Source: Scyliorhinus canicula
Taxonomy: Eukaryota
Direction of reading: 5' to 3'
Assembly (NCBI RefSeq): GCF_902713615.1
Contig: NC_052157.1
Location: 56,881,790 to 56,945,789, forward strand
Length of the DNA: 64,000 bases
Shown here piece after piece: positions 1 to 64,000 of this stretch. The position numbers were made by a program, and so were the translations under genes. The notes under the pieces were generated by a model. It made no database searches, was not told the origin of the DNA, and saw only the letters and a program-made list of their open reading frames with translations. The first letter of the stretch is position 1, and each line of letters opens with the position of its first letter.

Positions 1-250
1 TCCCCTTTATCCCCGTAAGCCAGTAACCCCACTTAACCTTTCCTGGACACTGAGGGAAATTTAGAATAGCCAATCCACCTGATCTGCACGTCTTTGGACT
101 GTGGGAGAAAACCGCAGCACCCGGAGGAAACCCACGCACACACGGGGAGGATGTGCAGACTTCGCACAGACAGTGACCCAAGCCAGGAATCGAACTGGGA
201 CCCTGGAGCTGTGAAGCAACCGTGATAACCACTGTGCTACCATGCTGCCC
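1..250 (-). mobile_element. HE1-type shark SINE
   Basis: Reverse complement begins gggcagcatggtagcacagtggtt..., with B-box-like gttcgattcc and the core gggtttcctccgggtgct. Confidence 0.9.
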
Positions 251-254
251 TAAC

Positions 255-1075
255 CTCTACCTTCCCCTCACATACCAACCTGCTGTTTTGGTACCCTTTA
301 ACCATTATACCTCTTGTAGCTTTACTGTTCCCTTCCACCCCACTTGCTAGTTGAAAGTCCTATTTATCCTTTCCACTAGAACACTGGTCCCAGATCAGTT
401 CAGGTGGAGACTGTCCCAATGGTGCAGATCACTCCTGTCCCAATGCTGATGCCAATGCCCCATGGAATGGAACCCCTCCTCCCCTCCTTCCCTCACCATT
501 CCTTTAGCCACGTGTTTACTTCCTTAATTTTCTCATCCCTATGCCAATTTGCAAAGGTCTTGGGTAGTGATCCACAGATTATAACCCGTGAAGACCTGTT
601 CTTTAATTTTGTTCCTAGTTCCTGATAATCCCCAAACAGGTCTTCTTTCATAGCCTTGCCTATATTGTTTGTCCCAACATGGACCACAATAACTGGATCC
701 TCAAGCCGGTTCAAGCCAGTTGGAGATGTTTGTCACCCTGGTTCCGGGCAGGCAGCATGTCACGCGGCACTCTGGGTCCTGTTTGCAAAGGATGCTATCA
801 GTTCCCCTAATTATATAATTCCCTCAACTATTATCTTTTTGCACCTCCACCGTCTCCGCTGCTTGAATGGCCACCCCTACCATGGTACAATGGTCGGCTC
901 GCTCATCCTCCCTACAGTCCTTTTCCTCACCTACAAAGGGAGCAAGGTCCTCATACATGTTGGACAAGGTCAAGAGCTGAGGCTCTTCCATTTCTGAATT
1001 TAGGATCCCTCCATCTGCCTCACTCACAGTCACACTCTACTGTTAACACACTGCTGTCCCTGACCACTGGCTGAA
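255..1075 (-). mobile_element. CR1 LINE ORF1 fragment (SGNH esterase-like), degenerate
   Basis: Minus-strand VIVVHVGTNNIGK...LGTKLKNRSSRVIICGSLP...VNTWLKEW; homologue at ~57935-58755. Confidence 0.8.
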
Positions 1076-1479
1076 TTTGAGGTACTTAATTGGCAGGATG
1101 CGAACACCTGACTGTTTCAGCCCTCCCTCCTCCTCCCCTTAACACATCATCCCACTAATTGGGATCTGACCATCTGACTAAGGTTAAGCACAATATCTCT
1201 CATTATCTACTCCCCAGGAGACCTTCTTTCTGTCAAGAAAGTTCCATTAGCTGTACTTCAGCAAACAATATCCACGGCTGGAATGAATTATGATCTGACT
1301 TTTATGGTGCTTTAATTGCACCTCTGTAGCCCCAAACTCTAGCTGCCTTTCAACCCAGGATTCTTTTAAAACTATTACTGCAGCAGTCAGATACACACCC
1401 GATCTCAGACTTTTAACCATTAATGTCCCAGCTGCGTACGATATAATCTATGTGAAATTCCTACATTCATCAAAGCACA

Positions 1480-2030
1480 TCTTCCACATGTCTTGTGGGA
1501 TTTTGGGATTCAAGTGCGGGCATCAACAGTTGGAGTTGTCCCGAGGGCCTGTAACCATCATCAGCCTGCAAGGATCCCTTCATACTTATGTCCATCCTTG
1601 AGAAGCTCTTCGACGCTACACGATTTGGACCTGTCTAGCAGATCTTCTTGGACACTTCCAGGGGAGTGGATGCGATCACCAACTCAACAATTCTGTCTGC
1701 TCGCTCTGCGTTTGAAAATTCACAGTATGCACTCTTTTCTCTGCACCTGTTGACAACGTGGTCTACAGATTATATAGGCTGCTGGCGAAATAACAGGAAA
1801 TCTGACCAATAAATACAGAATTTTAACTTGAATTTGATTCAGTCTTCCAATGTCGCCCATGCCTTTTGGGGATGGTTTCACTCTTCTGCTGTTATTCCCC
1901 ATGTTTCAGTCTGTGTCGACCTTCGTTCCCAATTGCTGGATGAGCTTTAGTGGCTTGCCCGTCTGGTTCAGACACACCTGAATCAAGAAACCACAATGTC
2001 TAAACATTTTGAATCAGGATGTTGCACCTC
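1480..2030 (-). pseudogene. Gypsy-type gag relic
   Basis: With stops and frameshifts: AIGNEGRHRL..WGITAEE...FRQQP..SVDHVVNRCREKSAYCEFS..RADRIVELVIASTP; duplicated at ~59160-59710. Confidence 0.6.
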
Positions 2031-2440
2031 AAACTTGGGTCTGACTCGCATTACGGAAACTCTAAAATTAGCGTACAAACTTGGGTCTGACTCGCATTAC
2101 GGAAACTCTAAAATTAGCGTACAACCATCCCCTTTATTATATCTTTCCAGATGACCCCAAAAGTATAAAAACACCGCTATATAGGGTATCAGAAGCTCTG
2201 TCGCACACAGTATCAAATACCGTCCTACACAAGGCACCAAAAACTCACGGCTTGGACGTAAATACCACCCGTTAAGAGGCAATGTGATCTGACTCCCTCT
2301 TGGTGGATCCCAATGTCCTCTCTGAGTCCTGGACCTAGGGTCTGGCTTCTTAAGATGGTCATTCCTGCAGTTTATCATTCCAGAACGTCCGTTGTCTCTC
2401 CTTCTTTTACGGATCTTTCTCACGCTTCCAGTTGAGATTA

Positions 2441-2790
2441 ATGTAGGAATTTCAGAGATATTGTTTTATAGGTATTTGGTGCAGTAAGGGTTACAAACCT
2501 GGGTTAATATGTGGGTGTGTGACTGCTGCGGTAGTGTTTATAAAGAATCCGTGTTTGAAAGGATTGGGAGTCAGAAGTGCAATTAAGCCATCATAAAGTT
2601 TGGGCTAATGGGGTTTTGATTGGATTAAGGGGGGTTCCCTGAGGAGATGGTAGGATACAGCTTGATAAGATGATGTAATTAATGGGAGGAGCTAAGATAT
2701 CAGGCATTTTGCAGAAAAGCAGTTTTAGTTGAGTTTTAGATTGGGATGTGAGCAGGAATCAAACACAGGAAGTAGTTGAGGTAAAAACGT
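2441..2790. mobile_element. LTR-like sequence; a diverged inverted copy lies at ~1100-1475
   Basis: Starts tgtaggaatttca; the reverse complement of 1300-1475 shares tgtaggaatttca, tgactgctgc.gta, aaagaatcc and cag.agtgcaatta. Confidence 0.5.
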
Positions 2791-3341
2791 TGTGCGATTT
2801 CAAGCAGGAGTTAGATATAGCTCTAGGGGCTAAACGGAACAAGAGATATGGGGGGAAGGCGGGATCAGGATATTGAACTTGATGATCAGCCATGATCATA
2901 ATGAATGGTGGAGCAGGCTTGAAGGGCCGAGTGGCCTCCTCCTACTTCTATTTCTAATGTATGTTTCTATGTAAGGATGCTGCGGGGACTTTAGGAGAGG
3001 ATGCGGAAGTGGAGTTGAGGCAGAGGGTCGGCCCTGATGGTATTGGATGGGGGAAGATGTATGGAGGGGGCGAATGGCCTCCTCCAGCTTTTTGTTTGTT
3101 CACGTCCATTTCACCGGAAGTGGGCATCGCTGGGCCAGGAAAGCATTTATTTCACATCCCCAATTGTCCGTTGAAGGGAGTGATTCTCTGGGCCATTTCA
3201 GGGGGGGAAGTTGAGTCGACCTCATTACCATGTGGGTATGGAATCAAGTATAGGCTAGACCAGGGTAAGGATGGCAATTTCCTTCTCCTAAAGAGACGTG
3301 AGTGTACCAAATGTGTCTTTATGACAATCCATGATGGTTTT

Positions 3342-3682
3342 GGGCAGCACGGTAGCATGGTGGTTAGCATAAATGCTTCACAGCTCCAGGGTCCCAGGTT
3401 CGATTTCCGGCTGGGTCACTGTCTGTGCGGAGTCTGCACGTCCTCCCCGTGTGTGCGTGGGTTTCCTCCGGGTGCTCCGGTTTCCTCCCACAGTCCAAAG
3501 TGCAGATTAGGTGGATTGGCCATGATAAATTGCCCTTAGTGTCCTAATAGTAAGGTTAAGGGGGGGAGTTGTTGGGTTGCGGGTATAGGGTGGATACGTG
3601 GGTTTGAGTAGGGTGATCATTGCTCGGCACAACATCGAGGGCCGAAGGGCCTGTTCTTTGCTGTACTGTTCTATGTTCTATG
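3342..3682 (+). mobile_element. HE1-type SINE
   Basis: gggcagcacggtagcatggtggttagc head, conserved core, (ttctatg)n tail; copy B at ~61026-61366. Confidence 0.9.
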
Positions 3683-3834
3683 TTGTCACAGTCGCCTTGA
3701 CAGTCCCGGGTTTCATGTATCGAACTTTAAGTTCCTCAGCTCCATGTTCCACATGCTGTTATGTAACTGGACGTCTTTGCCAAAGGCAATCCCTCAACCA
3801 GACCACTAACCGCCACCGGCTCTCCCTTCCACAG

Positions 3835-4137
3835 AACCTCTGGTCCTTACTCCTCCTCCCAATTGCTCGTGTGATGCTCCGCAGCGACGTTATGTTTCCT
3901 GTGGGACTCGGGTTCCAGTTGGGGATGTCGCCCGGATCGACTGGCTGAGAAACGGCGAGGAGGTGAGGCGGGAGAACCGGACGCAGTTGGTCAAACCTGC
4001 CGGCGATGGTTCCGCGAGATTGGAGAGCCAGGTTCCATTACCCGTGCCCAGCCCAGGCACTGAGGTGAATTACACATGTATGTTGACCCACACCTCCGGC
4101 GGCATCATCGACTGGAGGCAGTACATAGCAGTGAGCG
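3835..4137 (+). CDS. Ig-superfamily C1-type domain exon (copy A)
   Basis: Acceptor ctctcccttccacag|AA, donor G|gtaagt, 303 nt, phase 1-1, no stops: (E)PLVLTPPPNCSCDAPQRRYVSCGTRVPVGDVARIDWLRNGEEVRRENRTQLVKPAGDGSARLESQVPLPVPSPGTEVNYTCMLTHTSGGIIDWRQYIAVS. Cys-x13-Trp, 58 aa between canonical Cys, DG..S..L and YTC..H C1 hallmarks. Confidence 0.9.
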
Positions 4138-4394
4138 GTAAGTGTCCTGTTCTCCAATCCCTCCCCGGTGGGCTCACTGGTGCGATTAGCGTCCTGCCAG
4201 CTGTGGCTCATTGGCTCTTACGCTTTCTCTTTCCCTTCTGGGTCACCAATTTAAGACCACTCCCAAAATTGAAACCCCATAAGCACAGGCTGAAACTCCC
4301 AGTGCCAGCCCAAAGAAGCGCTGCACTGTCGTGGGCCAGTGTGAAGGGAGCATTATCGGAGGCTCAGTAATGAGGGAGCACCGTACTGTCAAAG

Positions 4395-4710
4395 AGGGTA
4401 CTGAGGGAGTGCTGCACTGTCAGAGGGTCAGTACTGAGGGAGTGCTGCACTGTCAGAGGGTCAATTTTGAGGGAGTGCTGCACTGTTGGAGGGTCAGTAC
4501 TGAGGGAGTGTTGCACTTTCAGAGGGTCAGTACTGAGGGAGTGCTGCACTGTCAGAGGGTCAATTTTGAGGGAGTGCTGCACTGTTGGAGGGTCAGTACT
4601 GAGGGAGTGTTGCACTTTCAGAGGGTCAGTACTGAGGGAGTGTTGCACTTTCAGAGGGTCAGTACTGAGGGAGTGCTGCACTGTCAGAGGGTCAATACTG
4701 AGGGAGTGTG
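4395..4710 (+). repeat. 33-bp tandem repeat in the C1-TM intron
   Basis: Unit gtactgagggagtgctgcactgtcagagggtca; copy B (~62087-62303) is exactly 99 bp (3 units) shorter. Confidence 0.95.
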
Positions 4711-4933
4711 TATACCTGTGCCTGCCTATGTAATCATTGTACGTGGGAACCACTTTCATCTCTCCTCTCTGGGTTCGCGATGCAGGATTTTTTTCTAACC
4801 AACCCTCACAAGCGGTGGATTGGGATTTAGACAAGGGAGATGATTGGATCGTGTGACAGAGATTTACAGATGTCAGAAAATTATGATTAATCACACTGAG
4901 CATTATAATCTCCTAATATCTCTCTCGTTTCAG

Positions 4934-5049
4934 AATCCCCCGGACACCCCGTGCTCTTGTATGTTCTATTGATCGTAAATTCAACCATAATTCTGCTGTT
5001 GGTTATGGCCGTTGGTCTGAAAAAACCTTCCGTGTGCAGCCGCTGCTAA
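4934..5049 (+). CDS. Transmembrane plus short cytoplasmic tail exon (copy A), terminal coding exon
   Basis: Acceptor tctctcgtttcag|AA in phase 1, matching the C1 exon donor; (E)SPGHPVLLYVLLIVNSTIILLLVMAVGLKKPSVCSRC*; ~23-aa hydrophobic run followed by KK. Confidence 0.85.
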
Positions 5050-5666
5050 GCTCACTGATGTCTATCCACTCTCTCTCGCTATCTCTCTCTGTCTCCCCAT
5101 CCATGAAGTCACTGCATGTACAAGACCCTGGCTGCTGAAATCAGCAACCCCCCTTCAAACCTCCAACCGCCTACCCTTCAATGTGAGCTCGGTCCATCAC
5201 CCCCCACCTCCCGCCCACCTTCCACCTCAAGCTTCTGGACTCTTCACCTCGGAATCAACAATTGGGCGACAATTTCGGAGTTGGGAGTCAGCATCGGGAG
5301 GTGGACCCATCATTCTCGAAACTCTGCCTTGCGTAATGTTAAGCACAATCCTGGGACTGTTCAAAATTAAATTAATCTTACTCCATCAGCTTAGGGAGTT
5401 TTACGGCTTTGAAGAACAGGAAATATATCCTGAACCCATGTGAGTTGAACGAATTTCCAAATTTGACCTTATTTACCAGCTTGCTTTGCAAGACCAGGTG
5501 TTGAAATGTGAAAAAACAATCTACTTAAAGCTGCAGACTGCTTCCTCGCAGATGAACAAGAACCATTGGACTGCGAAAGGGAAAGAAAATGCACTTGAAT
5601 CCCACAGTCACAAAAAGCGTGTTAAACTCAACATTTGGCCAATGTTTCATGTGGTGTTCAATGGTT

Positions 5667-5672
5667 AATAAA
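5667..5672 (+). terminator. Candidate polyadenylation signal of the IgSF gene (copy A)
   Basis: AATAAA ~620 nt after the stop codon, followed by a GT-rich tract (tttgaatgtgttggtctgtt). Confidence 0.5.
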
Positions 5673-6034
5673 TCACCGTTTGAATGTGTTGGTCTGTTCG
5701 CTGATCCACGTTCACTGTGCTCAATTCATCACATCTACAAACAGAACTCGAGAGCGCAAGGAACTGACGGCAGAGGATGTTCCGGATTCTGGGCGGAGAG
5801 CATTTGTTCATAAATCCTCTAATTCCTGAGATATTTTAGAGGACCATTTAATAAGCCTATTGTAGATCTAGAAACAGCATCACCTCTGCAGTGCTGGGAG
5901 ATAAATCGGAACTCTGCAGCCTTGTGATTGTCTGATCCTGCTTGCAGCACACCCTTGCCCATGGCTTTCCCGGGAACGTGTGGCGGTTTCAATGGAAAAT
6001 GTTGAGTGTGTAGCATTCTGAAGGTTTGGTACAA

Positions 6035-6600
6035 TAGAGGAACATAGAACATAGAACGATACAGCGCAGTACAGGCCCTTCGGCCCACGATGTTGCACCG
6101 ACATGGGAAGTCAAAAACTAAAGGTCATCTAACCTACACTATGCCATTATCATCCATATGCTTATCCAATAAACTTTTAAATGCCCTCAATGTTGGCGAG
6201 TTCACTACTGTTGCAGGTAGGGCATTCCACGGCCTCACCACTCTTTGCGTAAAAAACCTACCTCTGACGTCTGTCCTATATCTATTACCCCTCAATTTAA
6301 GGCTATGTCCCCTCGTGCTAGCCACCTCCATCCGTGGGAGAAGGCTCTCACTGTCCACCCTATCTAACCCTCTGATCATTTTGTATGCCTCTATTAAGTC
6401 ACCTCTTAACCTTCTTCTCTCTAACGAAAACAACCTCAAGTCCATCAGCCTTTCCTCTTAAGATTTTCCCTCCATACCAGGCAACATCCTGGTAAATCTC
6501 CTCTGCACCCGTTCCAAAGCTTCCACATCCTTCCTATAATGAGGCGACCAGAACTGTACGCAATATTCCAAATGCGGCTGTACCAGAGTTTTGTACAGGA
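6035..6600 (-). mobile_element. CR1 LINE 3' end
   Basis: Minus-strand LFSLERRRLRGDLIEAYKMIRGLDRVD...RFFTQRVV plus (catagaa)n tail. Confidence 0.9.
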
Positions 6601-6659
6601 GACAGCTGTGTAATGGTGAGGCCACTGGGTTAATAATCTCGTACCTGCACCCTAATGCT

Positions 6660-6793
6660 CCTGGATACTGCCGATGCTGGAAATCTGAAAGAAAGACAGA
6701 AAAGGTTGGAAAACAAAGTCAGCAGGTCTGGCAGCATCTGTGGAGAGAGAAACAGAGTTAATGCTTCGATTCACTGTGACTCTTCTTCAGAGA
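6660..6793 (-). mobile_element. Penelope-type terminal repeat fragment with hammerhead-like core
   Basis: Same family as 27057-27261; minus strand reads CTGAAGA-agagtcacagtgaatc-GAAGC. Confidence 0.55.
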
Positions 6794-6794
6794 T

Positions 6795-8400
6795 GAACAA
6801 AGAACAAAGGAAAGTACTGCACAGGAACAAGCCCTTCGGCCCTCCAAGCCAGCGCCGACCATGCTGCCTGTCGAAACTAAAATATTCTACACTTCCAGGG
6901 TCCGTATCCCTCTATTCCCACTCTATTCATGTATTTGTCAAGGTGCCCCTTAAATGTCACTATCATCCCTGCTTCCACCGTCTCCTCCGGCAACGAGTTC
7001 CAGGCGCCCACTACCCTCTGTGTAAAAAACTTGCCTCGTACATCTCCTCTAAACCTTGCCCCTCGCACCTTAAACATATGCCCCCTAGTAATTGACCCCT
7101 CTACCCTGGGAAAAAGTCTCTGACTATCCACCCTGTCTATGCCCCTCATAATTTTGTAGACCTCTATCAGGTTGCCCCTCAACCTCCACCATTCCAGTGA
7201 GAAGAAACCGAGCTTATTCAACCGCTCCTCATAGCTAATGCCCTCCATATCAGGCAACATCCTGGTAAATCTCTTCTGCACGCTCTCTAAAGCCTCCACA
7301 TCCTCTGGTCGTACGGCGACCAGAATTGAACACTGTACTCCAAGTGTGGCCGAACTAAGGTTCTATACAGCTGCAACATGACTTGCCAATTCTTATACTC
7401 AATGCCCCGACCAATGAAGGCAAGCATGCCGTATGCCTTCTTGACTACCTTCTCCGCCTGTATTGCCCCTTTCAGTGACCTGTATACCTGTACATCTAGA
7501 TCTCTCTGACTGTCAATACTCTTGAGGGTCCTACCATTCATTGTATATTCCCTACCTGTATTAGACCTTCCAAAATGCATTACCTCACATTTGTCCGGAT
7601 TAAACTCCATCTGTCATCTCTCCCCCCAAGTCTCCAGATGATCTAAATCCTTCTGTATCCTCTGACAGTCCTCATCGCTATCCACAATTCCACCAACTTT
7701 TGTGTCGTCTGCAAACTTACTAATCAGACCAGTTACATTTTCCTCCAAATCATTTATATATGCTACGAACAGCAATGGTGCCAGCACTGATCCCTGCGGA
7801 ACACCACTATTCACAGCCCTCCAATCAGAAAAGCACCCTTCCATTGCTACTCTCTGCCTTCTATGACCTAGCCAGCTCCGTATCCATCTTGCCAGCTCAC
7901 CTCTGATCCTGTGTGACTTCACCTTTTGTATCAGTCTGCCATGAGGGACCTTGTCAAAGGCCTTACTGAAGTCCACATAGACAACATCCACTGCCCTACC
8001 TGCATCAATCATTTTTGTGACCGCCTCGAAAAACTCTATCAAGTTAGTGAGACACGACCTGCCCTTCACAAAACCATGCTGCCTCTCGCTAATACATCCA
8101 CTTGCTTCCAAATGGGAGTAGATCCTGTCTCGAAGAATTCTCTCCAGTAATTTCCCTCCCACTGACATAAGGCTCATCGGTCCGTAGTTCCATGGATTAT
8201 CCTTGCTACACTTCTTAATCAAAGGAAAAACATTGGCTATTCTCCAGTCCTCCGGGACATCACCTGAAGGCAGTGAGGATCCAAAGATTTCTACCAAGGC
8301 CTCAGCAATTTACTCTCTTGCCTCCTTCAGTATTCTGGGCTAGATCCCATCAGGCCCTGGGGACTTAACTACCTTAATATTTTTCAAGACGCCAACACCT
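6795..8400 (-). mobile_element. CR1 LINE, reverse transcriptase to 3' end, degenerate
   Basis: QHGFVKGRSCLTNL, DFSKAFDKVPH, GVPQGS, KFADD and RPHLEYSVQFWSP motifs. Confidence 0.95.
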
Positions 8401-9710
8401 CATGAAGAGGGGGGAGGGATGTGATGGATTATGTATAAGAGGCAGCGGAGCAACTTGGGCAGAGCCGGAGTTCAGTGAGTGGTGGGAGCTGGGAGAGATA
8501 TATCGATAAGTGACAGATGGCCCGGTGGGGGGAGGGGTGGGATTGTCTTTTTATACTGGGACTAAAAATATTTTGGATATTGAAGAAACCAGTCAAGGTA
8601 GAGCAGAAAGGTCACAGACTAATTGAACCTATCACTGATTGTTGTAAAAACCAATCTGGTTCATTAACACCCTTTAAGGAAGGACATCTGCTGTACTTAC
8701 CCAGTCTGGCCTACATTTTGCTGTGCCATGTGACTGAACAGCAAGCACTGACCACACAAATGGACCTGGGTAAACTCAAACATGGTTTTCTTATTCATGA
8801 AGGTAAAGCAGGGCGTGTACATTCTCAGAGTGCTTGATGTCATGCCTCACAAGAGAGTCTGCACACTGCTGACTACCTATCATGTGATAAACTATATCGT
8901 TTTCGATCTGTTGATGGCATCTGTCATAGCCACACCTATTTCAAGGTTTACCACAAATGGAAAGTCACACCAGACCCACAGCAATTTTGTTGCCGATTAA
9001 CAAATCCCACCTCTGGCGTGCAGCCAGTCACTCAGTGGCAGCAGAAACCACGACAGGACAGGTCAGATCAGGTCCACTGCGGCTGACCAGAACGTATGTT
9101 CACCACCAGGGCAATGAGGGGCAAGGCAGCAAATGCCACCTTCGCCAGCGACGCCAAGCACACATGGAAAATACAAGTCAACGCCTGCCTGCAAGCAGTA
9201 TCGAAGTGAGATTTCGACCAATGGTTGGCAAGCCAGCGAATGGTGGAGGTAGGCATTCTGAACGTTGGCCAACGAACAGGCATCTAGGTGTCCGAAGGGA
9301 AGGGTTATGGGTGAGGCGAGGGGTAGGCATTGCAGAGGCTCGATCAATCGAGGGTGGAATATATGGGTGGAAGCTCTGGAGGTTGGTCGGGGGTCCATTG
9401 GAGGAATTACCCAGCGGATGGCATTTTACTGGGCAGCATGGTCACGTCAACGTGATGTCCTGTTTGCTATTGAGGGAAACAAAGGTAGAAAAAGTGATTC
9501 GCGAAGGAACCTCCTGGGTATTCTTAAGGAGAGACATGTTGGCTGAAATCAGCAGATCGTCTATGAGCATAAAGGCAAAACATCTCGGAGACTGGAATCT
9601 GAGATCAAAAGATCCAAAGTGCTGGACACACCTTGCAGGTCTGCGAGTGTTGGTGGAGAGGGAAAGAGGGGGGGAGGAATTTTCACCCCACCCCCACGCA
9701 TCGTACTTAC

Positions 9711-9790
9711 CGGCGGACAAGGTGGCTCGCTTATCATAGTCAGTGGGAACTAGCTGACGTCTTCGCCATTTTGGGTGGATCGTTTCGCCT
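9711..9790 (-). promoter_or_regulatory. Candidate promoter / non-coding first exon
   Basis: Minus strand: AAAATGGCG (YY1-like, 9764-9772), TGACGTC (CRE-like, 9755-9761), and a consensus donor GCCG|GTAAGT at 9711/9710 in CpG-rich sequence. Confidence 0.45.
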
Positions 9791-10194
9791 CACAGTATGG
9801 AGGGTGGGGGTGTAACGCCTTCGGAGGGATCGGAAGACCCTGCACTGGTGGGATGGGCCGGAACATTCTCTCCCAGAGTTCACGTTTCGAGTCCCATGTG
9901 GTTTTTCCAGACTGTCACATTCCACCCCGGACGTACACTCTGTTTTTACTCCCTCTCACTGCCACATCTGCTGAACTCGTCCAGAATTAATTTTGGGTCA
10001 TGCTTTAACCGTTATCTGTGCGTGTTTTAACCTTCAAATAGCTATTATTGCTTCTCTTGCAGTGTTAGTAGAGCTAACTTTAGACCATGTCATTGCAGTG
10101 TTTTTGGAATCTAATTTGACATTCCCAATAAAATCTCACAGGGGGAACTTGTGTGTGTGTCTTACGTAATATCTCCTGAATCTCGGGGAATGGA

Positions 10195-10537
10195 ATCATA
10201 GAAAACCTGCAGTGCAGAGGGAGGCCATTTGGCCCATCGAGTCTGCACCAACCCTCTGAAGGAGCATCCTAACCACTCCCACTCCCCCACTGTATTCCCG
10301 TAACCCCACCTAACCTGCACAGCTTTGGGAACTCAGGGGCAATATAGCACAGCCAATTCACCTAACCTCCACCTCTTTGGGCTGTGGGAGGAAACTGGAG
10401 CACCCGGAGGAAACCCACGCACACACAAGGAGAAAGTGCAAACTCTACACAGAGAGTCACCCGAGGTCGGAATTGAACCCGGGTCCCCGGCGGCGTGAGA
10501 AAACAGTGCTAACCATTGTGCTAGCGTGCTGCCCAAG
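10195..10537 (-). mobile_element. HE1-type SINE
   Basis: Conserved core ggaggaaactggagcacccggaggaaacccacgca on the plus strand; a partial copy follows at ~10660-10840. Confidence 0.85.
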
Positions 10538-11769: not shown

Positions 11770-11954
11770 ACTAGTTTCAATTCTTGAGTCACAGATATAG
11801 CAAAGGGCGGGGCCATTTGGCCCATCGTGTCTGTGCTGTCTATTTGAAAGATCTTTCTGATCTTTCTCAGTGCAGTGCAGCCCTCGCTCAGTACTGACCT
11901 TCTGTCAGAGCAGCACAACCCACTATTAATTTATCTATAACCCATCTGACATTG

Positions 11955-54025: not shown

Positions 54026-54375
54026 ATAGAATCATAGAATCATAGAATCATAGCATCACTAAAGTGCAGAAGGAGGCCATTCGGCCCATTGAGTCTACAC
54101 TGACCATCTCAAAGAACAGCCTACATATGCCCACGGCCCACCCTATCCCTGTAACCCAATAACTCCACCTAACCTTTTGAGCACTAAGGGGCAATTTAAC
54201 ATGGCCGATCCACCTAACCTGCACATCTTTGGAATGTGGGAGGAAACTGGAGCACCTGGAGGAAACCCACGCAGACACGAGGAGAATATACAAACTCTAC
54301 ACAGCCAGTGATCCAAGGCAGAAATCGAACCCGGATCCCAAGTTCTGCGAAGTAGCAGTGTTAACCACTGTTGCA
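54025..54375 (-). mobile_element. HE1-type SINE
   Basis: (atcatag)n tail and conserved core. Confidence 0.85.
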
Positions 54376-54389
54376 CGTTTTGCTATGGG

Positions 54390-55149
54390 TGTAAAACGCG
54401 TTTATTGGGGTGTATTAACTTGCCTGTGTTAAAGGCCGTGTGCTTAACACCACTAGGCTCTGTCTATGTATTTTCAGCTCAGGAGTCGCCAGTTGCCATA
54501 TAGACAACTCACATATATTCCAAGGTCAGGTTCAAAGTAATAAAACGATACACCGATTAGTAAGTTCCAAACGATCAATATTTATTATACAATTATAATA
54601 AATACGCATGCACACACTAAGGGACTAAGCTATGACTAAACTAAGCAAACAGAATACTTAACTACACAGGAACAGGCAAGGTCAGGGAGCGAGGCCTTCG
54701 TCCCGGTCTTGGTCTGCAACCTTCAGAAAGCGTGCTGGTCACTGGGGGTCTAGCGGGCTTGGTTCGCGTAGCGAGCGTCGTATTGGCGGCTGGTGCTCAA
54801 CGGCTGGAGTCAGGATACACGTTGGAGGTCTTGGTCAAAACTGGAGCACGAAACAACAGACAGGACCATGTGTGGGGGTCTATATTTATAGGGGTCCCCA
54901 ATGTCCTTCCCTCTTCCTGGGCGGGCTTTACCTTTAGGTATCGATTGGATCGCTTCCAATCGATATCTTTTGAATTCCTCCAATGTAAGGGTCTTTCTCG
55001 ATGGTGGGGGCGGTTTCTATGGTGGATACTTCTGGTGCCGCTCTGTCTGGACATCCACTTAAAGTATCTTATTCAAACCCAAATGTTGCCATTGTGTGTG
55101 CCTAGATCTGGACTGCCTCATTAGTATGTAGAACGTTCTGCCATTATCA
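54390..55149. mobile_element. LTR-like insert
   Basis: Ends ...ctgccattatca, internal tttatt/ctatatttata signals; interrupts CR1; left boundary and TSD not resolved. Confidence 0.5.
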
Positions 55150-55336
55150 CCTTTGGTTGGAGATCTTCCACCTGGCCAGAAACTGGTTTTGCTGCTTGCA
55201 AAATGCTAATGAGTGTTTGCAGGCTGTTTGCCTTGGTTAAACTGTTTTTCCCTACAGTCTTAGCGATTCTCCATTTTGTTTGGTTCAGTGTCCATTTTAG
55301 GTGGCTACAGTGGCTACACCACTGTGCCACTGTGGG

Positions 55337-57530
55337 CAGACCATCAGGTCCCATGGACTTATCTGTCTTAAATCCCGTCAGTTTTTTCAATACTGTCCCC
55401 CTAGTGATGGTTAATGCACCATGTTCCTCTGCATTAACTGTAGTTGTTGGAAAATCTTTATTGCCTTCTGCCATGAAGTCAGAGACAACATATTGGTTCA
55501 TTGCCTCTGCCATCTCTGTGTTCCCCATTATTACCTCACCAGTATCATCCTCTAAAGGGCCAACATTTACTTTCGCTGTTCTCTTCCTCTTTATATACTT
55601 ATAGAAACTCTTGGTCTTGGTATTAATGTTTTCTGCTAGTTTCCTTTCGTAGTTCATCTCAGCTCTTTTGATTTTATTTTTAGTAGGCTTTTGTTGAAGC
55701 TTAAAGTTCTCCTAATCCCCCACCTTAACACGAGCCTTTGCAGTATGGTATTCCATAATTTTGGGCTTTTATGTTTTCCTTGACTTCCTTGTTCAGCAAT
55801 TGAACATTTTTCTCCCTTTTACAATTCCTCTTCTTTTCAGGAATATAGGGCGCGATTCTCCCAAAACGGGAGAAATCGTAAGGCTGGCGTCAAACCCGGG
55901 CGGGTTTGACGCCAGCGCTCCCCTTCCCGACCGGGAACCGATTCTGGTCCCCGGTTGGGGCTAGCAGCCCGACGCCGTAAGCTCCGGCATCACAGGCTTA
56001 ACGAATTTCGTTAAGCCCGCTTGCCGGAGTTAGCGCCGGCTGACGCGTCATATGACGTCAGCCGCGCATGCGCGGATTGGAAGACTCCAACCCGCGCATG
56101 CGCGGATGACGTCATCGCGTATTTGCGCGAAACCCGCGCATGCGCGGGCCGGGATGCCCCTCAGCCGCCCCGCGAATGGATACTGCGGGGCGGCGGAAGG
56201 AGAAATAGTGCGCGGGCATCGGGCCCGCTGCCCGCGATCGGTGCCCACCGATCGTGGGCCCATGGCACCCTTGGCACGGCCGTGGTACTACCGTGCCAAT
56301 CGGTGCCATGGTTATAAAAAGCGAGTTGTTCCCGCCGTTTTTACGAACGGCCAGACCAGGTGTGTTTGCCGTTCGTAAAAACAGCGTAAAGGGCTGGGAC
56401 TTCGGCCCATCTATCAGCTGTGAATCGCTGCCGGCCGTAAAAAAACGGCGGCAGCGATTCGTGTCGGGAGTTGGGCGGGGGGGGGGGGGAGAATAGCGGG
56501 AGGGCGGGAAAAATGTCGGGAAGGCTCTCCCGCTATTCTCCGACCCGTCGTGGGGGGCGGAGAATCGCGCCCATACTTTATTTGAGAGGTGTTTAATATC
56601 TCCCTGAACATCCGCCATTGTTCCTCAACTGTCCAACCCTCAATTATTTGTGCCCAGTCTACTTGGGCTAACTCTTTCCTCAGGCCTGTATAATTACCTC
56701 GGCCCCACGCTAAAACTCTGTCCTCTCTCACTCAATCTGAATTTGAAATTCTAGCATGCTGTGATCACTCCATCCAAGAAGATCCTTAACACAAGACTAT
56801 TTATCAACCCTTATTTGTTACATAATACTAAATCTAAAATCGCCTGCTCTCTGGTTGTCTCCATAACATATTGCTTGAAGGAACAATCCCTCATACACTC
56901 TATGAAATCTTCCTCGTGCTACCCTTGCCAATTTGAATAGTTCAATCAATATGCATCTTAAAATCGCCCATGATTACTTTTGTGCCCTTCTCACAAGCCC
57001 TGGTTATTTTTTGATTTATACTATGTCCCACTTTGGAAGTATTGCTCGAAGGCCTATAAATTGCACTACCAAGAAGATTTTCCCTTGTTTTCTATTTCCA
57101 CCCAGATCGATTCAACATTTTGGCCCTGAGTGCCAACATGATTTCTTAATGCAGCCTTGGTGTAATCTTTAACAAATAAAACAACTCTACCTCCTATTCC
57201 ATCCTGTCTATCCTTGCGGAATGCTGAGTACCGTTGGGCATTCAACTCCCAGTCCTGGTCCTCCTGCAGCCATGTTTCAGTGATCCCCACCAAATCATAC
57301 CCATTTGCCTCTTTGTGCCCTCAGCTCATTGAATTTATTCCGAATACTGAGTGCATTAAGGTACAAGGTTTATAAATATGTCCTACTGATTTGCCTTCCC
57401 CTTGCAGGATTTTTTTGTGCACTCCACTTTTCAGACATTCTGACCTCCTTTATTAATCTCTGTTAACACTCAGCATCATCCCTAAATTTTGCTCTCACAG
57501 TCTCCTTAGATTTTGATTTTTTACATTTTG
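55337..57530 (-). mobile_element. CR1 LINE ORF2 5' half
   Basis: KSFYKYIKRKR, DKSMGPDG, GITETWLQE. Confidence 0.85.
55848..56572. mobile_element. Harbinger-derived MITE inserted in CR1
   Basis: TIR gggcgcgattctcc / ggagaatcgcgccc, 3-bp TSD ATA, CpG-rich internal palindromes. Confidence 0.92.
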
Positions 57531-57589
57531 TATCCCCTCTGTAGTCGTTAGACTGGCCCTGCCTGTTTATCCTATTAACATTTCACAGC

Positions 57590-57930
57590 ATTTACAGTGC
57601 AGAAGGAAGCCATTCAGCCCATCGAGTCTGCACCGGCCCTTGGAAAGAGCACCCTACTTAAGCCCCGTGCCTCCACCCTATCTCCTTTATCCCCGTAAGC
57701 CAGTAACCCCACTTAACCTTCCCTGGACACTGAGGGAAATTTAGAATAGCCAATCCACCTGATCTGCACGTCTTTGGACTGTGGGAGAAACCGCAGCACC
57801 CGGAGGAAACCCACGCACACACGGGGAGGATGTGCAGACTTCGCACAGACAGTGACCCAAGCCAGGAATCGAACTGGGACCCTGGAGCTGTGAAGCAACC
57901 GTGATAACCACTGTGCTACCATGCTGCCCT
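57590..57930 (-). mobile_element. HE1-type SINE (its right part corresponds to 1-250)
   Basis: Conserved core and tail. Confidence 0.9.
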
Positions 57931-60900
57931 AACCTCTACCTTCCCCTCACATACCAACCTGCTGTTTTGGTACCCTTTAACCATTATACCTCTTGTAGCT
58001 TTACTGTTCCCTTCCACCCCACTTGCTAGTTGAAAGTCCTATTTATCCTTTCCACTAGAACACTGGTCCCAGATCAGTTCAGGTGGAGACTGTCCCAATG
58101 GTGCAGATCACTCCTGTCCCAATGCTGATGCCAATGCCCCATGGAATGGAACCCCTCCTCCCCTCCTTCCCTCACCATTCCTTTAGCCACGTGTTTACTT
58201 CCTTAATTTTCTCATCCCTATGCCAATTTGCAAAGGTCTTGGGTAGTGATCCACAGATTATAACCCGTGAAGACCTGTTCTTTAATTTTGTTCCTAGTTC
58301 CTGATAATCCCCAAACAGGTCTTCTTTCCTAGCCTTGCCTATATTGTTTGTCCCAACATGGACCACAATAACTGGATCCTCAAGCCGGTTCAAGCCAGTT
58401 GGAGATGTTTCTCACCCTGGTTCCGGGCAGGCAGCATGTCACGCGGCACTCTTGGTCCTGTTTGCAAAGGATGCTATCAGTTCCCCTAATTATATAATTC
58501 CCTCAACTATTATCTTTTTGCACCCCCACCGTCTCCGCTGCTTGAATGGCTACCCGTACCATGGTACAATGGTCGGCTCGCTCATCCTCCCTACAGTCCT
58601 TTTCCTCACCTAGAAAAGGGAGCAAGGTCCTCATACATGTTGGACAAGGTCAAGAGCTGAGGCTCTTCCATTTCTGAATTTAGGATCCCTCCATCTGCCT
58701 CACTCACAGTCACACTCTACTGTTAACACACTGCTGTCCCTGACCACTGGCTGAATTTGAGGTACTTAATTGGTTGGATGCGAACACCTGACTGTTTCAG
58801 CCCTCCCCCCTCCTCCCCTTAACACATCATCCCACTAATTGGGATCTGACCATCTGACTAAGGCTAAGCACAATATCTCTCATTATCTACTCCCCAGGAA
58901 ACCTTCTTTCTGTCAAGAAAGTTCCATTAGCTGTACTTCAGCAAACAATATCCACGGCTGGAATGAATTATGATCTGACTTTTATGGTGCTTTAATTACA
59001 CCTCTGTAGCCCCAAACTCTAGCTGCCTTTACACCCAGGATTCTTTTAAAACTATTACTGCAGCAGTCAGATACACACCCCATCTCAGACTTTTAACCAT
59101 TAATGTCCCAGCTGCGTACGATATAATCTATATGTGAAATTCCTACATTCATCAAAGCACATCTTCCACATGTCTTGTGGGATTTTGGGATTCAAGTGCG
59201 GGCATCAACAGTTGGAGTTGTCCCGAGGGCCTGTAACCATCATCAGCCTGCAAGGATCCCTTCATACTTATGTCCATCCTTGAGAAGCTCTTCGACGCTA
59301 CACGATTTGGACCTGTCTAGCAGATCTTCTTGGACACTTCCAGGGGAGTGGATGCGATCACCAACTCAACAATTCTGTCTGCTCGCTCTGCGTTTGAAAA
59401 TTCACAGTATGCACTCTTTTCTCTGCACCTGTTGACAATGTGGTCTACAGATTATATAGGCTGCTGGCGAAATAACAGGAAATCTGACCAATAAATACAG
59501 AATTTTAACTTGAATTTGATTCAGTCTTCCAATGTCGCCCATGCCTTTTGGGGATGGTTTCACTCTTCTGCTGTTATTCCCCATGTTTCAGTCTGTGTCG
59601 ACCTTCATTCCCAATTGCTGGATGAGCTTTAGTGGCTTGCCCGTCTGGTTCAGACACACCTGAATCAAGAAACCACAATGTCTAAACATTTTGAATCAGG
59701 ATGTTGCACCTCAAACTTGGGTCTGACTCGCATTACGGAAACTCTAAAATTAGCGTACAAACTTGGGTCTGACTCGCATTACGGAAACTCTAAAATTAGC
59801 GTACAACCATCCCCTTTATTATATCTTTCCAGATGACCCCAAAAGTATAAAAACACCGCTATATAGGGTATCAGAAGCTCTGTCGCACACAGTATCAAAA
59901 TACCGTCCTACACAAGGCACCAAAAACTCACGGCTTGGACGTAAATACCACCCGTTAAGAGGCAATGTGATCTGACTCCCTCTTGGTGGATCCCAATGTC
60001 CTCTCTGAGTCCTGGACCTAGGGTCTGGCTTCTTAAGATGGTCATTCCTGCAGTTTATCATTCCAGAACGTCCGTTGTCTCTCCTTCTTTTACGGATCTT
60101 TCTCACGCTTCCAGTTGAGATTAATGTAGGAATTTCAGAGATATTGTTTTATAGGTATTTGGTGCAGTAAGGGTTACAAACCTGGGTTAATATGTGGGTG
60201 TGTGACTGCTGCGGTAGTGTTTATAAAGAATCCGTGTTTGAAAGGATTGGGAGTCAGAAGTGCAATTAAGCCATCATAAAAGTTTGGGCTAATGGGGTTT
60301 TGATTGGATTAAGGGGGGTTCCCTGAGGAGATGGTAGGATACAGCTTGATAAAATGATGTAATTAATGGGAGGAGCTAAGATATCAGGCATTTTGCAGAA
60401 AAGCAGTTTTAGTTGAGTTTTAGATTGGGATGTGAGCAGGAATCAAACACAGGAAGTAGTTGAGGTAAAAACGTTGTGCGATTTCAAGCAGGAGTTAGAT
60501 ATAGCTCTAGGGGCTAAACGGAACAAGAGATATGGGGGGAAGGCGGGATCAGGATATTGAACTTGATGATCAGCCATGATCATAATGAATGGTGGAGCAG
60601 GCTTGAAGGGCCGAGTGGCCTCCTCCTACTTCTATTTCTAATGTATGTTTCTATGTAAGGATGCTGCGGGGACTTTAGGAGAGGATGCGGAAGTGGAGTT
60701 GAGGCAGAGGGTCGGCCCTGATGGTATTGGATGGGGGAAGATGTATGGAGGGGGCGAATGGCCTCCTCCAGCTTTTTGTTTGTTCACGTCCATTTCACCG
60801 GAAGTGGGCATCGCTGGGCCAGGAAAGCATTTATTTCACATCCCCAATTGTCCGTTGAAGGGAGTGATTCTCTGGGCCATTTCAGGGGGGGAAGTTGAGT

Positions 60901-61518
60901 CGACCTCATTACCATGTGGGTATGGAATCAAGTATAGGCTAGACCAGGGTAAGGATGGCAATTTCCTTCTCCTAAAGAGACGTGAGTGTACCAAATGTGT
61001 CTTTATGACAATCCATGATGGTTTTGGGCAGCACGGTAGCATGGTGGTTAGCATAAATGCTTCACAGCTCCAGGGTCCCAGGTTCGATTTCCGGCTGGGT
61101 CACTGTCTGTGCGGAGTCTGCACGTCCTCCCCGTGTTTGCGTGGGTTTCCTCCGGGTGCTCCGGTTTCCTCCCACAGTCCAAAGTGCAGATTAGGTGGAT
61201 TGGCCATGATAAATTGCCCTTAGTGTCCTAATAGTAAGGTTAAGGGGGGGAGTTGTTGGGTTGCGGGTATAGGGTGGATACGTGGGTTTGAGTAGGGTGA
61301 TCATTGCTCGGCACAACATCGAGGGCCGAAGGGCCTGTTCTTTGCTGTACTGTTCTATGTTCTATGTTGTCACAGTCGCCTTGACAGTCCCGGGTTTCAT
61401 GTATCGAACTTTAAGTTCCTCAGCTCCATGTTCCACATGCTGTTATGTAACTGGACGTCTTTGCCAAAGGCAATCCCTCAACCAGACCACTAACCGCCAC
61501 CGGCTCTCCCTTCCACAG

Positions 61519-61821
61519 AACCTCTGGTCCTTACTCCTCCTCCCAATTGCTCGTGTGATGCTCCGCAGCGACGTTATGTTTCCTGTGGGACTCGGGTTCC
61601 AGTTGGGGATGTCGCCCGGATCGACTGGCTGAGAAACGGCGAGGAGGTGAGGCGGGAGAACCGGACGCAGTTGGTCAAACCTGCCGGCGATGGTTCCGCG
61701 AGATTGGAGAGCCAGGTTCCATTACCCGTGCCCAGCCCAGGCACTGAGGTGAACTACACATGTATGTTGACCCACACCTCCGGCGGCATCATTGACTGGA
61801 GGCAGTACATAGCAGTGAGCG
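61519..61821 (+). CDS. Ig-superfamily C1-type domain exon (copy B)
   Basis: Same splice sites; protein identical to copy A; two nucleotide differences, both silent (AAT/AAC, ATC/ATT). Confidence 0.9.
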
Positions 61822-62526
61822 GTAAGTGTCCTGTTCTCCAATCCCTCCCCGGTGGGCTCACTGGTGCGATTAGCGTCCTGCCAGCTGTGGCTCATTGGCT
61901 CTTACGCTTTCTCTTTCCCTTCTGGGTCACCTGGTCACCAATTTGAGACCACTCCCAAAATTGAAACCCCATAAGCACAGGCTGAAACTCCCAGTGCCAG
62001 CCCAAAGAAGCGCTGCACTGTCGTGGGCCAGTGTGAAGGGAGCATTATCGGAGGCTCAGTAATGAGGGAGCACCGTACTGTCAAAGAGGGTACTGAGGGA
62101 GTGCTGCACTGTCAGAGGGTCAGTACTGAGGGAGTGCTGCACTGTCAGAGGGTCAATTTTGAGGGAGTGCTGCACGGTTGGAGGGTCAGTACTGAGGGAG
62201 TGTTGCACTTTCAGAGGGTCAGTACTGAGGGAGTGCTGCACTGTTGGAGGGTCAATTCTGAGGGAGTGCTGCACTGTCAGAGGGTCAATACTGAGGGAGT
62301 GTGTATACCTGTGCCTGCCTATGTAATCATTGTACGTGAGAACCACTTTCATCTCTCCTCTCTGGGTTCGCGAAACAGGAATTTTTTCTAACCAACCCTC
62401 ACAAGCGGTGGATTGGGATTTAGACGCGGGAGATGATTGGATCGTGTGACAGAGATTTACAGATGTCAGAAAATTATGATTAATCACACTGAGCATTATA
62501 ATCTCCTAATATCTCTCTCGTTTCAG

Positions 62527-62642
62527 AATCCCCCGGACACCCCGTTCTCTTGTATGTTCTATTGATCGTAAATTCAACCATAATTCTGCTGTTGGTTATG
62601 GCCGTTGGTCTGAAAAAACCTTCCGTGTGCAGCCGCCGCTAA
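62527..62642 (+). CDS. Transmembrane plus short tail exon (copy B)
   Basis: (E)SPGHPVLLYVLLIVNSTIILLLVMAVGLKKPSVCSRR*; GTG/GTT silent change and TGC/CGC in the last codon relative to copy A. Confidence 0.85.
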
Positions 62643-63265
62643 GCTCACTGATGTCTTTCCACTCTCTCTCGCTCTCTATCTCTCTCTCTGTCTCTCCATC
62701 CATGAAGCCACTGCATGTACAAGACCCTGGCTGCTGAAATCAGCAACCCCCCTTCAAACCTCCAACCGCCTACCCTTCAATGTGAGCTCGGTCCATCACC
62801 CCCCACCTCCCGCCCACCTTCCACCTCAAGCTTCTGGACTCTTCACCTCGGAATCAACAATTGGGCGACAATTTCGGAGTTGGGAGTCAGCATCGGGAGG
62901 TGGACCCATCATTCTCGAAACTCTGCCTCGCGTAATGTTAAGAACAATCCTGGGACTGTTCAAAATTAAATTAATCTTACTCCATCAGCTTAGGGAGTTT
63001 TACGGCTTTGAAGAACAGGAAATATATCCTGAACCCATGTGAGTTGAACGAATTTCCAAATTTGACCTTATTTACCAGCTTGCTTTGCAAGACCAGGTGT
63101 TGAAATGTGAAAAAACAATCTACTTAAAGCTGCAGACTGCTTCCTCACAGATGAACAAGAACCATTGGACTGCGAAAGGGAAAGAAAATGCACTTGAATC
63201 CCACAGTCACAAAAAGCGTGTTAAACTCAACATTCGGCCAATGTTTCATGTGGTGTTCAATGGTT

Positions 63266-63271
63266 AATAAA
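63266..63271 (+). terminator. Candidate polyadenylation signal (copy B)
   Basis: AATAAA at the position homologous to 5667. Confidence 0.5.
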
Positions 63272-64000
63272 TCACCGTTTGAATGTGTTGGTCTGTTCGC
63301 TGATCCACGTTCACTGTGCTCAATTCATCACATCTACAAACAGAACTCGAGAGCGCAAGGAACTGACGGCAGAGGATGTTCCGGATTCTGGGCGGAGAGC
63401 ATTTGTTCATAAATCCTCTAATTCCTGAGATATTTTAGAGGACCATTTAATAAGCCTATTGTAGGTCTAGAAACAGCATCACCTCTGCAGTGCTGGGAGA
63501 TAAATCGGAACTCTGCAGCCTTGGGATTGTCTGATCCTGCTTGCAGCACACCCTTGCCCATGGCTTTCCCGGGAACGTGTGGTGGTTTCAATGGAAAATG
63601 TTGAGTGTGCAGCATTCTGAAGGTTTGGTACAATAGAGGAACATAGAACATAGAACGATACAGCGCAGTACAGGCCCTTCGGCCCACGATGTTGCACCGA
63701 CATGGGAAGTCAAAAACTAAAGGCCATCTAACCTACACTATGCCATTATCATCCGTATGCTTATCCAATAAACTTTTAAATGCCCTCAATGTTGGCGAGT
63801 TCACTACTGTTGCAGGTAGGGCATTCCACGGCCTCACCACTCTTTGCGTAAAAATCCTACCTCTGACGTCTGTCCTATATCTATTACCCCTCAATTTAAG
63901 GCTATGTCCCCTTGTGCTAGCCACCTCCATCCGCGGGAGAAGGCTCTCACTGTCCACCCTATCTAACCCTCTGATCATTTTGTATGCCTCTATTAAGTCA

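What the first reader, a model, noticed from the sequence alone, without database searches (positions are those of the whole stretch)
1..64000. The receptor locus recurs at a ~57.7-kb period (possible multi-copy cluster)
Seen: 1-6401 is repeated nearly identically at 57681-64000, and both copies run off the window edges. Inference: the simplest model is a tandem array with a ~57.7-kb unit carrying one receptor gene each. This would be reminiscent of the cluster-type duplication known for shark Ig loci, but here for a TM-anchored single-C1 gene. The window cannot distinguish a full-unit tandem repeat from a shorter (at least 6.4 kb) dispersed duplication, or from two haplotypes assembled in series.
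Basis: partly seen in the sequence, partly recalled or inferred. Interest (0 to 1): 0.7.

Follow-up and report, generated by a model that had tools for sequence, protein, structure and literature searches.

The report
Partial duplicate of a catshark receptor gene
A 6.4-kb block holding only the last two coding exons of an already annotated catshark antibody-like receptor gene appears again 57.7 kb downstream, so this is an ordinary young partial gene duplication (or possibly an assembly error), not an array of complete receptor genes.

Summary
Window 1-6401 and 57681-64000 are direct copies with 53 base differences and 8 indels (99.2% identity over aligned bases). Both copies run off the window.

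The block is the 3' part of Scyliorhinus canicula XP_038670304.1 ("immunoglobulin lambda-1 light chain-like", 293 aa, gene range 37.1 kb). It carries the C1 exon, the TM/short-tail exon and the 3'UTR. The leader and V exons lie upstream of the window.

A protein-versus-DNA search finds no leader or V exon in the 51-kb spacer, which is filled with transposable elements. So "one receptor gene per 57.7-kb unit" fails, and copy B is a C1-TM fragment.

A real gene cluster exists at an older level. A full paralog, LOC119974972, has the preceding RefSeq accession numbers on the same chromosome, and the same pair occurs in S. torazame.

The window has no N. A scaffold-level haplotype duplication would need its gap inside the window, so that artefact is unlikely; a contig-level one is not excluded.

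Public runs gave contigs only. Spliced RNA contigs are almost purely copy-A type, and DNA depth was inconclusive. The true extent of the duplication is unresolved, whether a two-copy 57.7-kb tandem starting in intron 2 or a short dispersed copy.

The scan has noted this kind of V-C1 receptor gene elsewhere in this genome. It has not noted this duplication.

The parts
1..6401 (+). Copy A of the duplicated block. It holds the end of intron 2, the C1 exon, intron 3 with a 33-bp minisatellite, the TM exon, the 3'UTR, and the start of a LINE fragment. Its left end is cut by the window.
57681..64000 (+). Copy B of the block: 53 base differences and 8 indels from copy A. Its right end is cut by the window.
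3835..4137 (+). C1-type Ig exon of XP_038670304.1 (residues 155-255), 303 nt, phase 1-1. Acceptor ..CCACAG|, donor |GTAAGT.
   Evidence: Pfam C1-set scores only 18-19 bits, below the cut-off of 21. The Heterodontus ortholog scores 36.8 bits.
4934..5049 (+). TM and short-tail exon of copy A (ESPGHP...GLKKPSVCSRC, stop TAA at 5047-5049). The 3'UTR follows, with AATAAA at 5667-5672.
   Evidence: RNA contigs of runs X1 and X4 begin exactly at the acceptor, 4933/4934.
61519..61821 (+). C1 exon of copy B. Splice sites are identical to copy A. It has 2 synonymous differences (A positions 4070 and 4109).
62527..62642 (+). TM and short-tail exon of copy B. It is intact, with one synonymous change. The last residue is R instead of C, the state also seen in the S. 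torazame ortholog (...SRR).
1926..4069 (+). Low-divergence tract between the copies: 2 differences in 2,144 bp, against about 1.2% elsewhere. It covers the end of intron 2 and most of the C1 exon.
   Evidence: permutation P about 5e-5
4359..4708 (+). 33-bp minisatellite in intron 3: 10.7 units in copy A and 7.7 in copy B (62051-62301). This accounts for the 99-bp indel. It belongs to a very high-copy family.
6402..57680 (.). Spacer between the copies. It contains no leader or V exon. It is made of LINE RT/EN fragments, SINE copies, a Harbinger-type DDE ORF, LTR-retroelement pol pieces, and 14-bp and 70-bp satellites.
57582..57933 (.). SINE-like repeat that straddles the first aligned base of copy B. 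Its copy-A counterpart is cut by the window at 1-254. This shows that 57681 is a window effect and not the duplication boundary.

Best explanation
This is a young, direct segmental duplication of at least 6.4 kb. It copied only the 3' part of the annotated small-spotted catshark gene for XP_038670304.1, a non-rearranging leader / V(J) / C1 / TM-short-tail membrane receptor. The copied part is the end of intron 2, the C1 exon, intron 3, the TM exon and the 3'UTR, and it now sits 57.7 kb downstream. Copy B has intact exons and splice sites but no leader, promoter-side or V exon of its own within 51 kb. It is therefore a gene fragment: most likely inert, at most a spare C1-TM cassette. It is not a second receptor gene. 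The left breakpoint lies in intron 2, less than 9.6 kb left of the window start. The right end is unknown. The event may be a two-copy tandem duplication of a 57.7-kb unit that starts in intron 2, or a shorter copy placed 51 kb away. Shown here: the repeat, the exon content, the absence of V and leader exons, and that copy A is the transcribed copy. Inferred: that the duplication exists in the animal rather than only in the assembly, and its extent.
For: Repeat and identity.

Gene identity: the C1 exon is 100% identical to XP_038670304.1. The gene range is 37,102 bp.

Exon content: only residues 155-293 map to the window, and they map twice. Nothing maps for residues 1-154 even at E up to 10. 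A motif scan finds no V/J-like ORF.

Copy B integrity: identical splice sites and only synonymous changes, apart from the last residue.

Assembly context: there is no N in the window. For any tandem-type false duplication with this period, the junction must fall between 6,320 and 57,681, inside the window. A scaffolded haplotig would have a gap at its left end before reaching a V image. Neither is present.

Population comparison in 4933-6068: three other samples differ from copy A at 0.1-0.6% of sites. Copy B differs from copy A at 1.3%. Copy B is therefore an outlier sequence, as expected of a paralog.

Reference animal: its own Illumina contigs that run through copy-A-specific sites have word depths of 6.2 and 5.5. 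Unique contigs 3-5 kb downstream have 3-5.5. That is above what a single haplotype should give.
Against: Divergence is within the species' allelic range. The A/B difference is 0.84%, while the Atlantic and Mediterranean assemblies are only 98.3% identical (PMC11979771). Contigs of other animals differ from the window by 0.2-1.2% at 8.3-10.1 kb.

The differences are strongly patchy. This is natural for two alleles, whereas paralogs would need a gene-conversion tract of about 2 kb.

No laid contig is copy-B type throughout.

In DNA run X10, a 708-nt contig crosses five differing sites at depth 4.89, equal to 4.7 downstream. So there is no twofold depth in that animal. This fits absence of the duplication there. 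It also fits a duplication that extends beyond 10 kb.

The reference animal's contigs break at the differing sites, as they do at heterozygous sites.

Only contigs were available, not raw DNA reads, at about 4-6x depth. All depth arguments are therefore weak.
Confidence: 0.62

Rival explanations
1. Assembly artefact. Copies A and B are the two haplotypes of one locus in the reference male, and the Falcon-unzip contig laid them in series. The genome would then have a single C1-TM block.
For: The 0.84% divergence is within between-individual variation in this species. The differences are patchy, as between recombining alleles. Contigs of the reference animal drop out at the differing sites. Run X10 shows single-copy-like depth and one contig that mixes A and B letters. 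The assembly came from noisy CLR reads with purge_dups.
Against: There is no gap in the 64 kb. The usual haplotig or contig-overlap duplications sit at contig ends, next to N runs. With this period, the junction would have to be inside the window. Copy B's upstream sequence loses homology to the gene (no V image) within continuous sequence. Copy B is further from A than three other animals are. Depths of 6.2 and 5.5 on copy-A-specific contigs of the reference animal exceed what one haplotype should give. A contig with A letters at 4781-4782 but the B letter at 4788 hints at a third sequence type in that animal.
Confidence: 0.24
2. One reading: a tandem array with a 57.7-kb unit, each unit carrying a complete receptor gene, in the style of shark Ig clusters.
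For: The copies are in direct orientation with a constant offset, and both run off the window. The family does have two neighbouring full genes, with ranges of 37 and 47 kb, in two Scyliorhinus species.
Against: No leader or V exon occurs anywhere in the unit between the copies. The place where the V image should fall is a LINE ORF. Only two annotated genes of the family were found in the S. canicula protein set, and neither is encoded by copy B.
Confidence: 0.03
3. Copy B is the remnant of an older third gene unit of the cluster. Its C1-TM region was recently overwritten by gene conversion from copy A, and its V and leader exons were lost.
For: The cluster is old, since the paralog pair is shared with S. 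torazame. The near-identical 2.1-kb tract suggests sequence exchange between the copies.
Against: Homology runs unbroken for at least 6.4 kb through introns, SINE and LINE fragments and a minisatellite, with the same insertions in both copies. That is far longer than usual conversion tracts. No trace of V or leader exons is left.
Confidence: 0.06

Closest known systems
Young segmental (tandem or nearby) duplications that create partial gene copies in vertebrate genomes
   Same: Direct orientation, about 99% identity and a repeat-rich setting. One breakpoint lies inside an intron, so only some of the gene's exons are copied. No new transposon insertions have occurred in either copy since the event.
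   Different: Neither boundary is visible in the window. The size (6.4 kb up to about 57.7 kb), the mechanism, and whether it is fixed in the species are all untested.
Retained haplotype (false) duplications in long-read assemblies, the class that purge_dups targets
   Same: About 1% divergence, patchy differences and a CLR/Falcon-unzip assembly.
   Different: There is no adjoining gap or contig end within 64 kb. The copies are separated by 51 kb of continuous unique sequence. Homology stops inside an intron without a break in the assembly.
Shark immunoglobulin cluster organisation (many V-D-J-C or V-J-C mini-loci; from my own knowledge of the field)
   Same: An Ig-superfamily gene with a light-chain-like V(J) and a C1-type domain. 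The best solved-structure matches are antibody light chains over residues 45-242. More than one copy of the C exon is present.
   Different: The protein is membrane-anchored. The second unit has no V. Only two copies are seen, and the spacing is 57.7 kb of transposon sequence.
Duplicated constant-region cassettes behind shared upstream segments (TCRB C1/C2, IGL J-C repeats; from my own knowledge)
   Same: Only the constant and transmembrane part is duplicated, downstream of a single V.
   Different: There are no J segments and no rearrangement to choose a cassette. The two cassettes encode the same protein apart from the last residue. RNA contigs carry copy-A letters at 12-13 of 14 differing sites, so there is no sign that copy B is used.
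The older paralog pair LOC119974972 (XP_038670302/303) and XP_038670304 in S. canicula, matched by XP_072324991 and XP_072324989 in S. torazame
   Same: Same gene family and same chromosome, with consecutive accession numbers. This is a genuine multi-gene cluster of complete V-C1-TM genes.
   Different: The paralogs are 74% identical as proteins and predate the split of the two species. The repeat in this window is 99% identical, partial, and much younger.

Membership tests
Tandem array of complete receptor genes (cluster-type organisation) | Each repeat unit holds all the exons of the gene (leader, V, C1, TM). | tested here: not met
   tblastn of XP_038670304.1 and 9 relatives finds only the C1 and TM exons, at 3.8-5.0 kb and 61.5-62.6 kb. 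Nothing matches residues 1-154. A motif scan is also negative.
Tandem array of complete receptor genes (cluster-type organisation) | Homology is continuous over the whole period, with three or more units. | not testable with these tools
   The window shows only 6.4 kb of overlap. DNA outside the window could not be fetched.
Real segmental duplication | Two long, near-identical copies lie in one continuous sequence with no assembly gap between them or at their edges. | tested here: met
Real segmental duplication | Read depth is about twice that of the flanks, and both copy types are present in every individual. | tested here: inconclusive
   Only Logan contigs were available, at about 4-6x. Reference-animal contigs at 6.2 and 5.5 versus 3-5.5 downstream lean towards a duplication. 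Run X10 at 4.89 versus 4.7 does not. No contig is copy-B type throughout.
False haplotypic duplication | The copies lie at a contig end or next to an N gap. | tested here: not met
   There is no N in 64 kb. With a 57.68-kb period, the junction of a tandem false duplication would have to lie at 6,320-57,681.
False haplotypic duplication | Divergence is in the species' allelic range and each copy has half depth. | tested here: inconclusive
   The divergence part is met: 0.84% against 98.3% identity between two assemblies. Depth is unresolved.
Non-rearranging V(J)-C1-TM receptor family (annotated 'immunoglobulin lambda-1 light chain-like') | A V-set domain, then a C1-type domain, then a single TM segment with a short tail, conserved among sharks. 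| tested here: met
   V-set scores 41.5 bits. C1-set scores 19.3 bits in the catshark, below the cut-off of 21, but 36.8 bits in the Heterodontus ortholog. Antibody light chains are the best solved matches. Orthologs occur in Scyliorhinus torazame, Mustelus, Heterodontus and Carcharodon. The exon structure and TM segment were read directly.

The most novel reading that the evidence does not exclude
The duplication is real and is a 57.7-kb tandem event that starts in intron 2. A non-rearranging V(J)-C1 receptor gene would then have one V exon followed by two C1-TM cassettes, as in TCR-beta C1/C2. Read-through transcripts, which already extend more than 5 kb past the stop codon, would sometimes splice V to the distal cassette. 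It might also be a copy-number polymorphism between catshark populations.
Probability: 0.07. Interest if true: 0.4.

Novelty: new member of a known kind. Interest (0 to 1): 0.15.

Why it matters
It matters mainly as a correction. Anyone counting antigen-receptor-like genes in the catshark should count one complete gene here, plus its neighbouring full paralog LOC119974972, and a C1-TM fragment. They should not count an Ig-style array. The place is also a concrete spot where the sScyCan1 assembly should be checked with its own long reads. If the copy is real, it is a small example of how constant-region cassettes can be multiplied behind a single V exon. The two cassettes encode almost the same protein, so no functional novelty is expected.

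Tried and rejected
Reading outside the window failed.
- The search of earlier findings refuses places before 1 or after 64000.
- The look-up of encoding contigs located the gene and its relatives on chromosome-scale records but returned no DNA, because the files were too large. Isoform X2 is not on record.
- I therefore could not make the 200-kb dot-plot or compare with S. torazame DNA.

Both run searches found only Logan contigs for DNA, with no raw DNA reads. The single read-laying run therefore could not give true depth or allele shares. Copy-B-type short contigs with clustered differences may also have failed the 95% likeness cut.

Other negative or set-aside results:
- Rfam found nothing in the window.
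- Pfam on other ORFs inside the block gave only a weak GDSL/OSK-like hit at 496-732 (-). I take this to be a LINE-derived fragment.
- I considered gene conversion of an older third unit and rank it low (see rivals).
- I considered using predicted proteins from Logan contigs to recover transcripts. The protein searches returned only NCBI and UniRef entries for this family, so I dropped that idea.
- No published heterozygosity figure for S. canicula was found.
Full report
**Observation.** The window has no N and no masked letters. Self-BLAST shows that 1-4610 matches 57681-62302 at 99.0% (bit score 8270) and that 4497-6401 matches 62090-64000 at 98.0%. Both matches are in direct orientation. A global alignment gives 53 single-base differences (33 transitions, 20 transversions) and 8 indels. 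The largest indels are a 99-bp difference in a 33-bp minisatellite, an 8-bp insertion and a 6-bp insertion. Both copies are cut by the window ends. A SINE-like repeat at 57582-57933 straddles copy B's first aligned base. So 57681 is a window effect, not a boundary, and 6.4 kb is a minimum length.

**What the block is.** The ORF at 3810-4367 contains a phase 1-1 exon at 3835-4137 (acceptor CCACAG|, donor |GTAAGT). It gives a weak Pfam C1-set hit. A database search with it returned a 100% identical S. canicula protein, XP_038670304.1 ("immunoglobulin lambda-1 light chain-like", 293 aa), on a 165,189,515-bp chromosome of GCA_902713615.2, with a gene range of 37,102 bp.
- The protein has a leader, a V-set domain with a built-in J-like strand (GAGTRLFV), a C1-type domain, a TM segment and a nine-residue tail (KKPSVCSRC).
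- Antibody light chains are its best solved-structure matches, over residues 45-242.
- The second exon in the window is 4934-5049 (ESPGHP...KKPSVCSRC, stop at 5047-5049), followed by a 3'UTR with AATAAA at 5667.
- tblastn places residues 155-255 and 254-293 at these two exons, and again at 61519-61821 and 62527-62642.

**Why the "one gene per unit" model fails.** No part of residues 1-154 (leader and V) matches anywhere in the window, even at E up to 10. This was tested with ten family members as queries. A motif scan of all ORFs of 40 aa or more finds no V- or J-like exon. I could not read that DNA.
- If homology ran on to the left, the V exon's image would lie at about 48,070-48,423. That stretch is inside a LINE ORF, 47475-48461.
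- So the duplicated segment begins inside intron 2, less than 9.6 kb left of the window start.
- Copy B has no leader or V exon of its own in the 51 kb upstream, although the whole gene spans only 37 kb.
- The spacer consists of LINE RT/EN fragments, SINE copies, a Harbinger-type DDE ORF, LTR-retroelement pol pieces, and 14-bp and 70-bp satellites.

**State of copy B.** Its splice sites are identical to copy A's. The C1 exon differs at two synonymous sites. The TM exon differs at one synonymous site and at the last codon (TGC Cys in A, CGC Arg in B). The S. torazame ortholog also ends in ...SRR, so B keeps the older state. Neither copy has gained a transposon insertion since the event.

**The real cluster.** S. 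canicula has a full paralog, LOC119974972 (XP_038670302.1 and XP_038670303.1; 301 and 264 aa; gene range 46.8 kb). It is on the same chromosome, and its accession numbers immediately precede XP_038670304.1. S. torazame has the same pair (XP_072324991.1 and XP_072324989.1). Single relatives occur in Mustelus, Heterodontus and Carcharodon.
- The paralogs are about 74% identical, so that duplication predates the split of the two catsharks.
- None of the paralog's exons lies in the window.
- The idea of a multi-copy locus is therefore right at this older level. That level is not what the 99% repeat shows.

**Real or artefact: the assembly.** The assembly came from 63x PacBio CLR with Falcon-unzip, purge_dups, 10x, Bionano and Hi-C (PMC11979771). 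Haplotype duplications of the usual kind sit at contig ends next to gaps.
- With a 57.68-kb period, the junction of a tandem false duplication must lie at 6,320-57,681, inside the window. A scaffolded haplotig would show a gap at its left end.
- The window has no N, and homology to the gene stops inside continuous sequence.
- This argues against scaffold-level artefacts. It does not exclude contig-level ones.
- The 0.84% divergence does not help. The Atlantic and Mediterranean assemblies are only 98.3% identical. Contigs from other animals differ from the window by 0.2-1.2% at 8.3-10.1 kb.
- The differences are very patchy. There are 2 in 1926-4069, where 17.8 are expected (permutation P about 5e-5). 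This fits recombining alleles, or a roughly 2-kb conversion tract between paralogs.

**Real or artefact: public runs.** Only Logan contigs were available for DNA. I laid four runs on 4400-10399.
- Runs X1 and X4, from a 2021 study, give contigs of 1,468 and 2,070 nt at depths of 198 and 23. These fit from exactly 4933, the TM-exon acceptor, to 6068, and have 332 and 935 further letters upstream that do not fit the intron.
- DNA run X25 has a contig that runs straight across the acceptor (4679-4994).
- X1 and X4 are therefore spliced RNA, so the gene is expressed. The transcripts carry copy-A letters at 13 and 12 of the 14 differing sites in that stretch.
- The same two runs also cover 8263-10139 at about half that depth. 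Transcription therefore continues well past the stop codon.
- Copy-B letters appear singly in otherwise A-type contigs: 5330 in three samples, 5548 in X4, 5636 in X10, and 4788 in X25. No contig is B-type throughout.
- In the reference animal (X25), contigs through copy-A-specific sites have depths of 6.2 and 5.5, against 3-5.5 downstream. This leans towards a true extra copy.
- In X10, a contig across five differing sites has depth 4.89, against 4.7 downstream. This fits no duplication in that animal, or a duplication that also covers 8-10 kb.
- At 4-6x coverage, with contigs only, none of this is decisive.

**Verdict.**
- I put about 0.62 on a real, young partial-gene duplication of unresolved extent. 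It could be a two-copy 57.7-kb tandem starting in intron 2, or a shorter copy 51 kb away.
- I put about 0.24 on a contig-level haplotype artefact.
- I put about 0.06 on an old third unit overwritten by gene conversion.

Either way, the finding is ordinary. The gene is already annotated, the second copy encodes nothing new, and the Ig-cluster analogy does not hold. The earlier notes on this genome describe many non-rearranging V-C1 receptor genes on other pieces. Within the look-ups I made, none describes this duplication.

Noticed in passing
window 8263-10139: Two RNA-type runs (X1 at depth 107, X4 at depth 13) have long contigs here, at about half the depth of the receptor's 3'UTR. Transcription therefore seems to continue more than 3 kb beyond the stop codon and the AATAAA at 5667. 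This could be a very long 3'UTR, read-through, or a separate transcript.
   Followed up: no
window 11955-12485 (+) and 42461-44374 (inverted): Arrays of the same 70-bp satellite unit lie in opposite orientation about 30 kb apart, at 80-84% identity between arrays. They may be the ends of a large element, or just a dispersed satellite family.
   Followed up: no
window 13000-21000: A GC-rich block (58-61% GC) holds a 14-bp minisatellite of about 111 units (15408-16949) and a Harbinger-type DDE_Tnp_4 ORF (19358-20206, Pfam E 1.6e-8).
   Followed up: partly
window 31973-34426 (-) and 38039-41424 (-): These are broken pol pieces of LTR-retroelement or endogenous-retrovirus type: RNase H plus an integrase start at 32465-33823, and an integrase core at 38495-38965.
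   Followed up: partly
window 4359-4708 and 62051-62301: The 33-bp minisatellite in intron 3 differs by three units between the copies. It belongs to a very abundant family, with summed word depth above 1e6 in whole-genome contigs.
   Followed up: no
outside the window: LOC119974972 (XP_038670302.1/XP_038670303.1) and Carcharodon LOC121274018: The neighbouring paralog and the white-shark relative each have an annotated X2 isoform. It reads past the C1 donor and ends without a TM segment (...VVRDFDF), which would be a possible secreted form.
   Followed up: no
window 5044 (last codon of the receptor): Copy A has TGC (Cys) and copy B has CGC (Arg). The S. torazame ortholog ends in Arg, so the Cys of the expressed copy is the derived state, from a C-to-T change at a CpG. 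RNA contigs from two other animals also carry it.
   Followed up: partly
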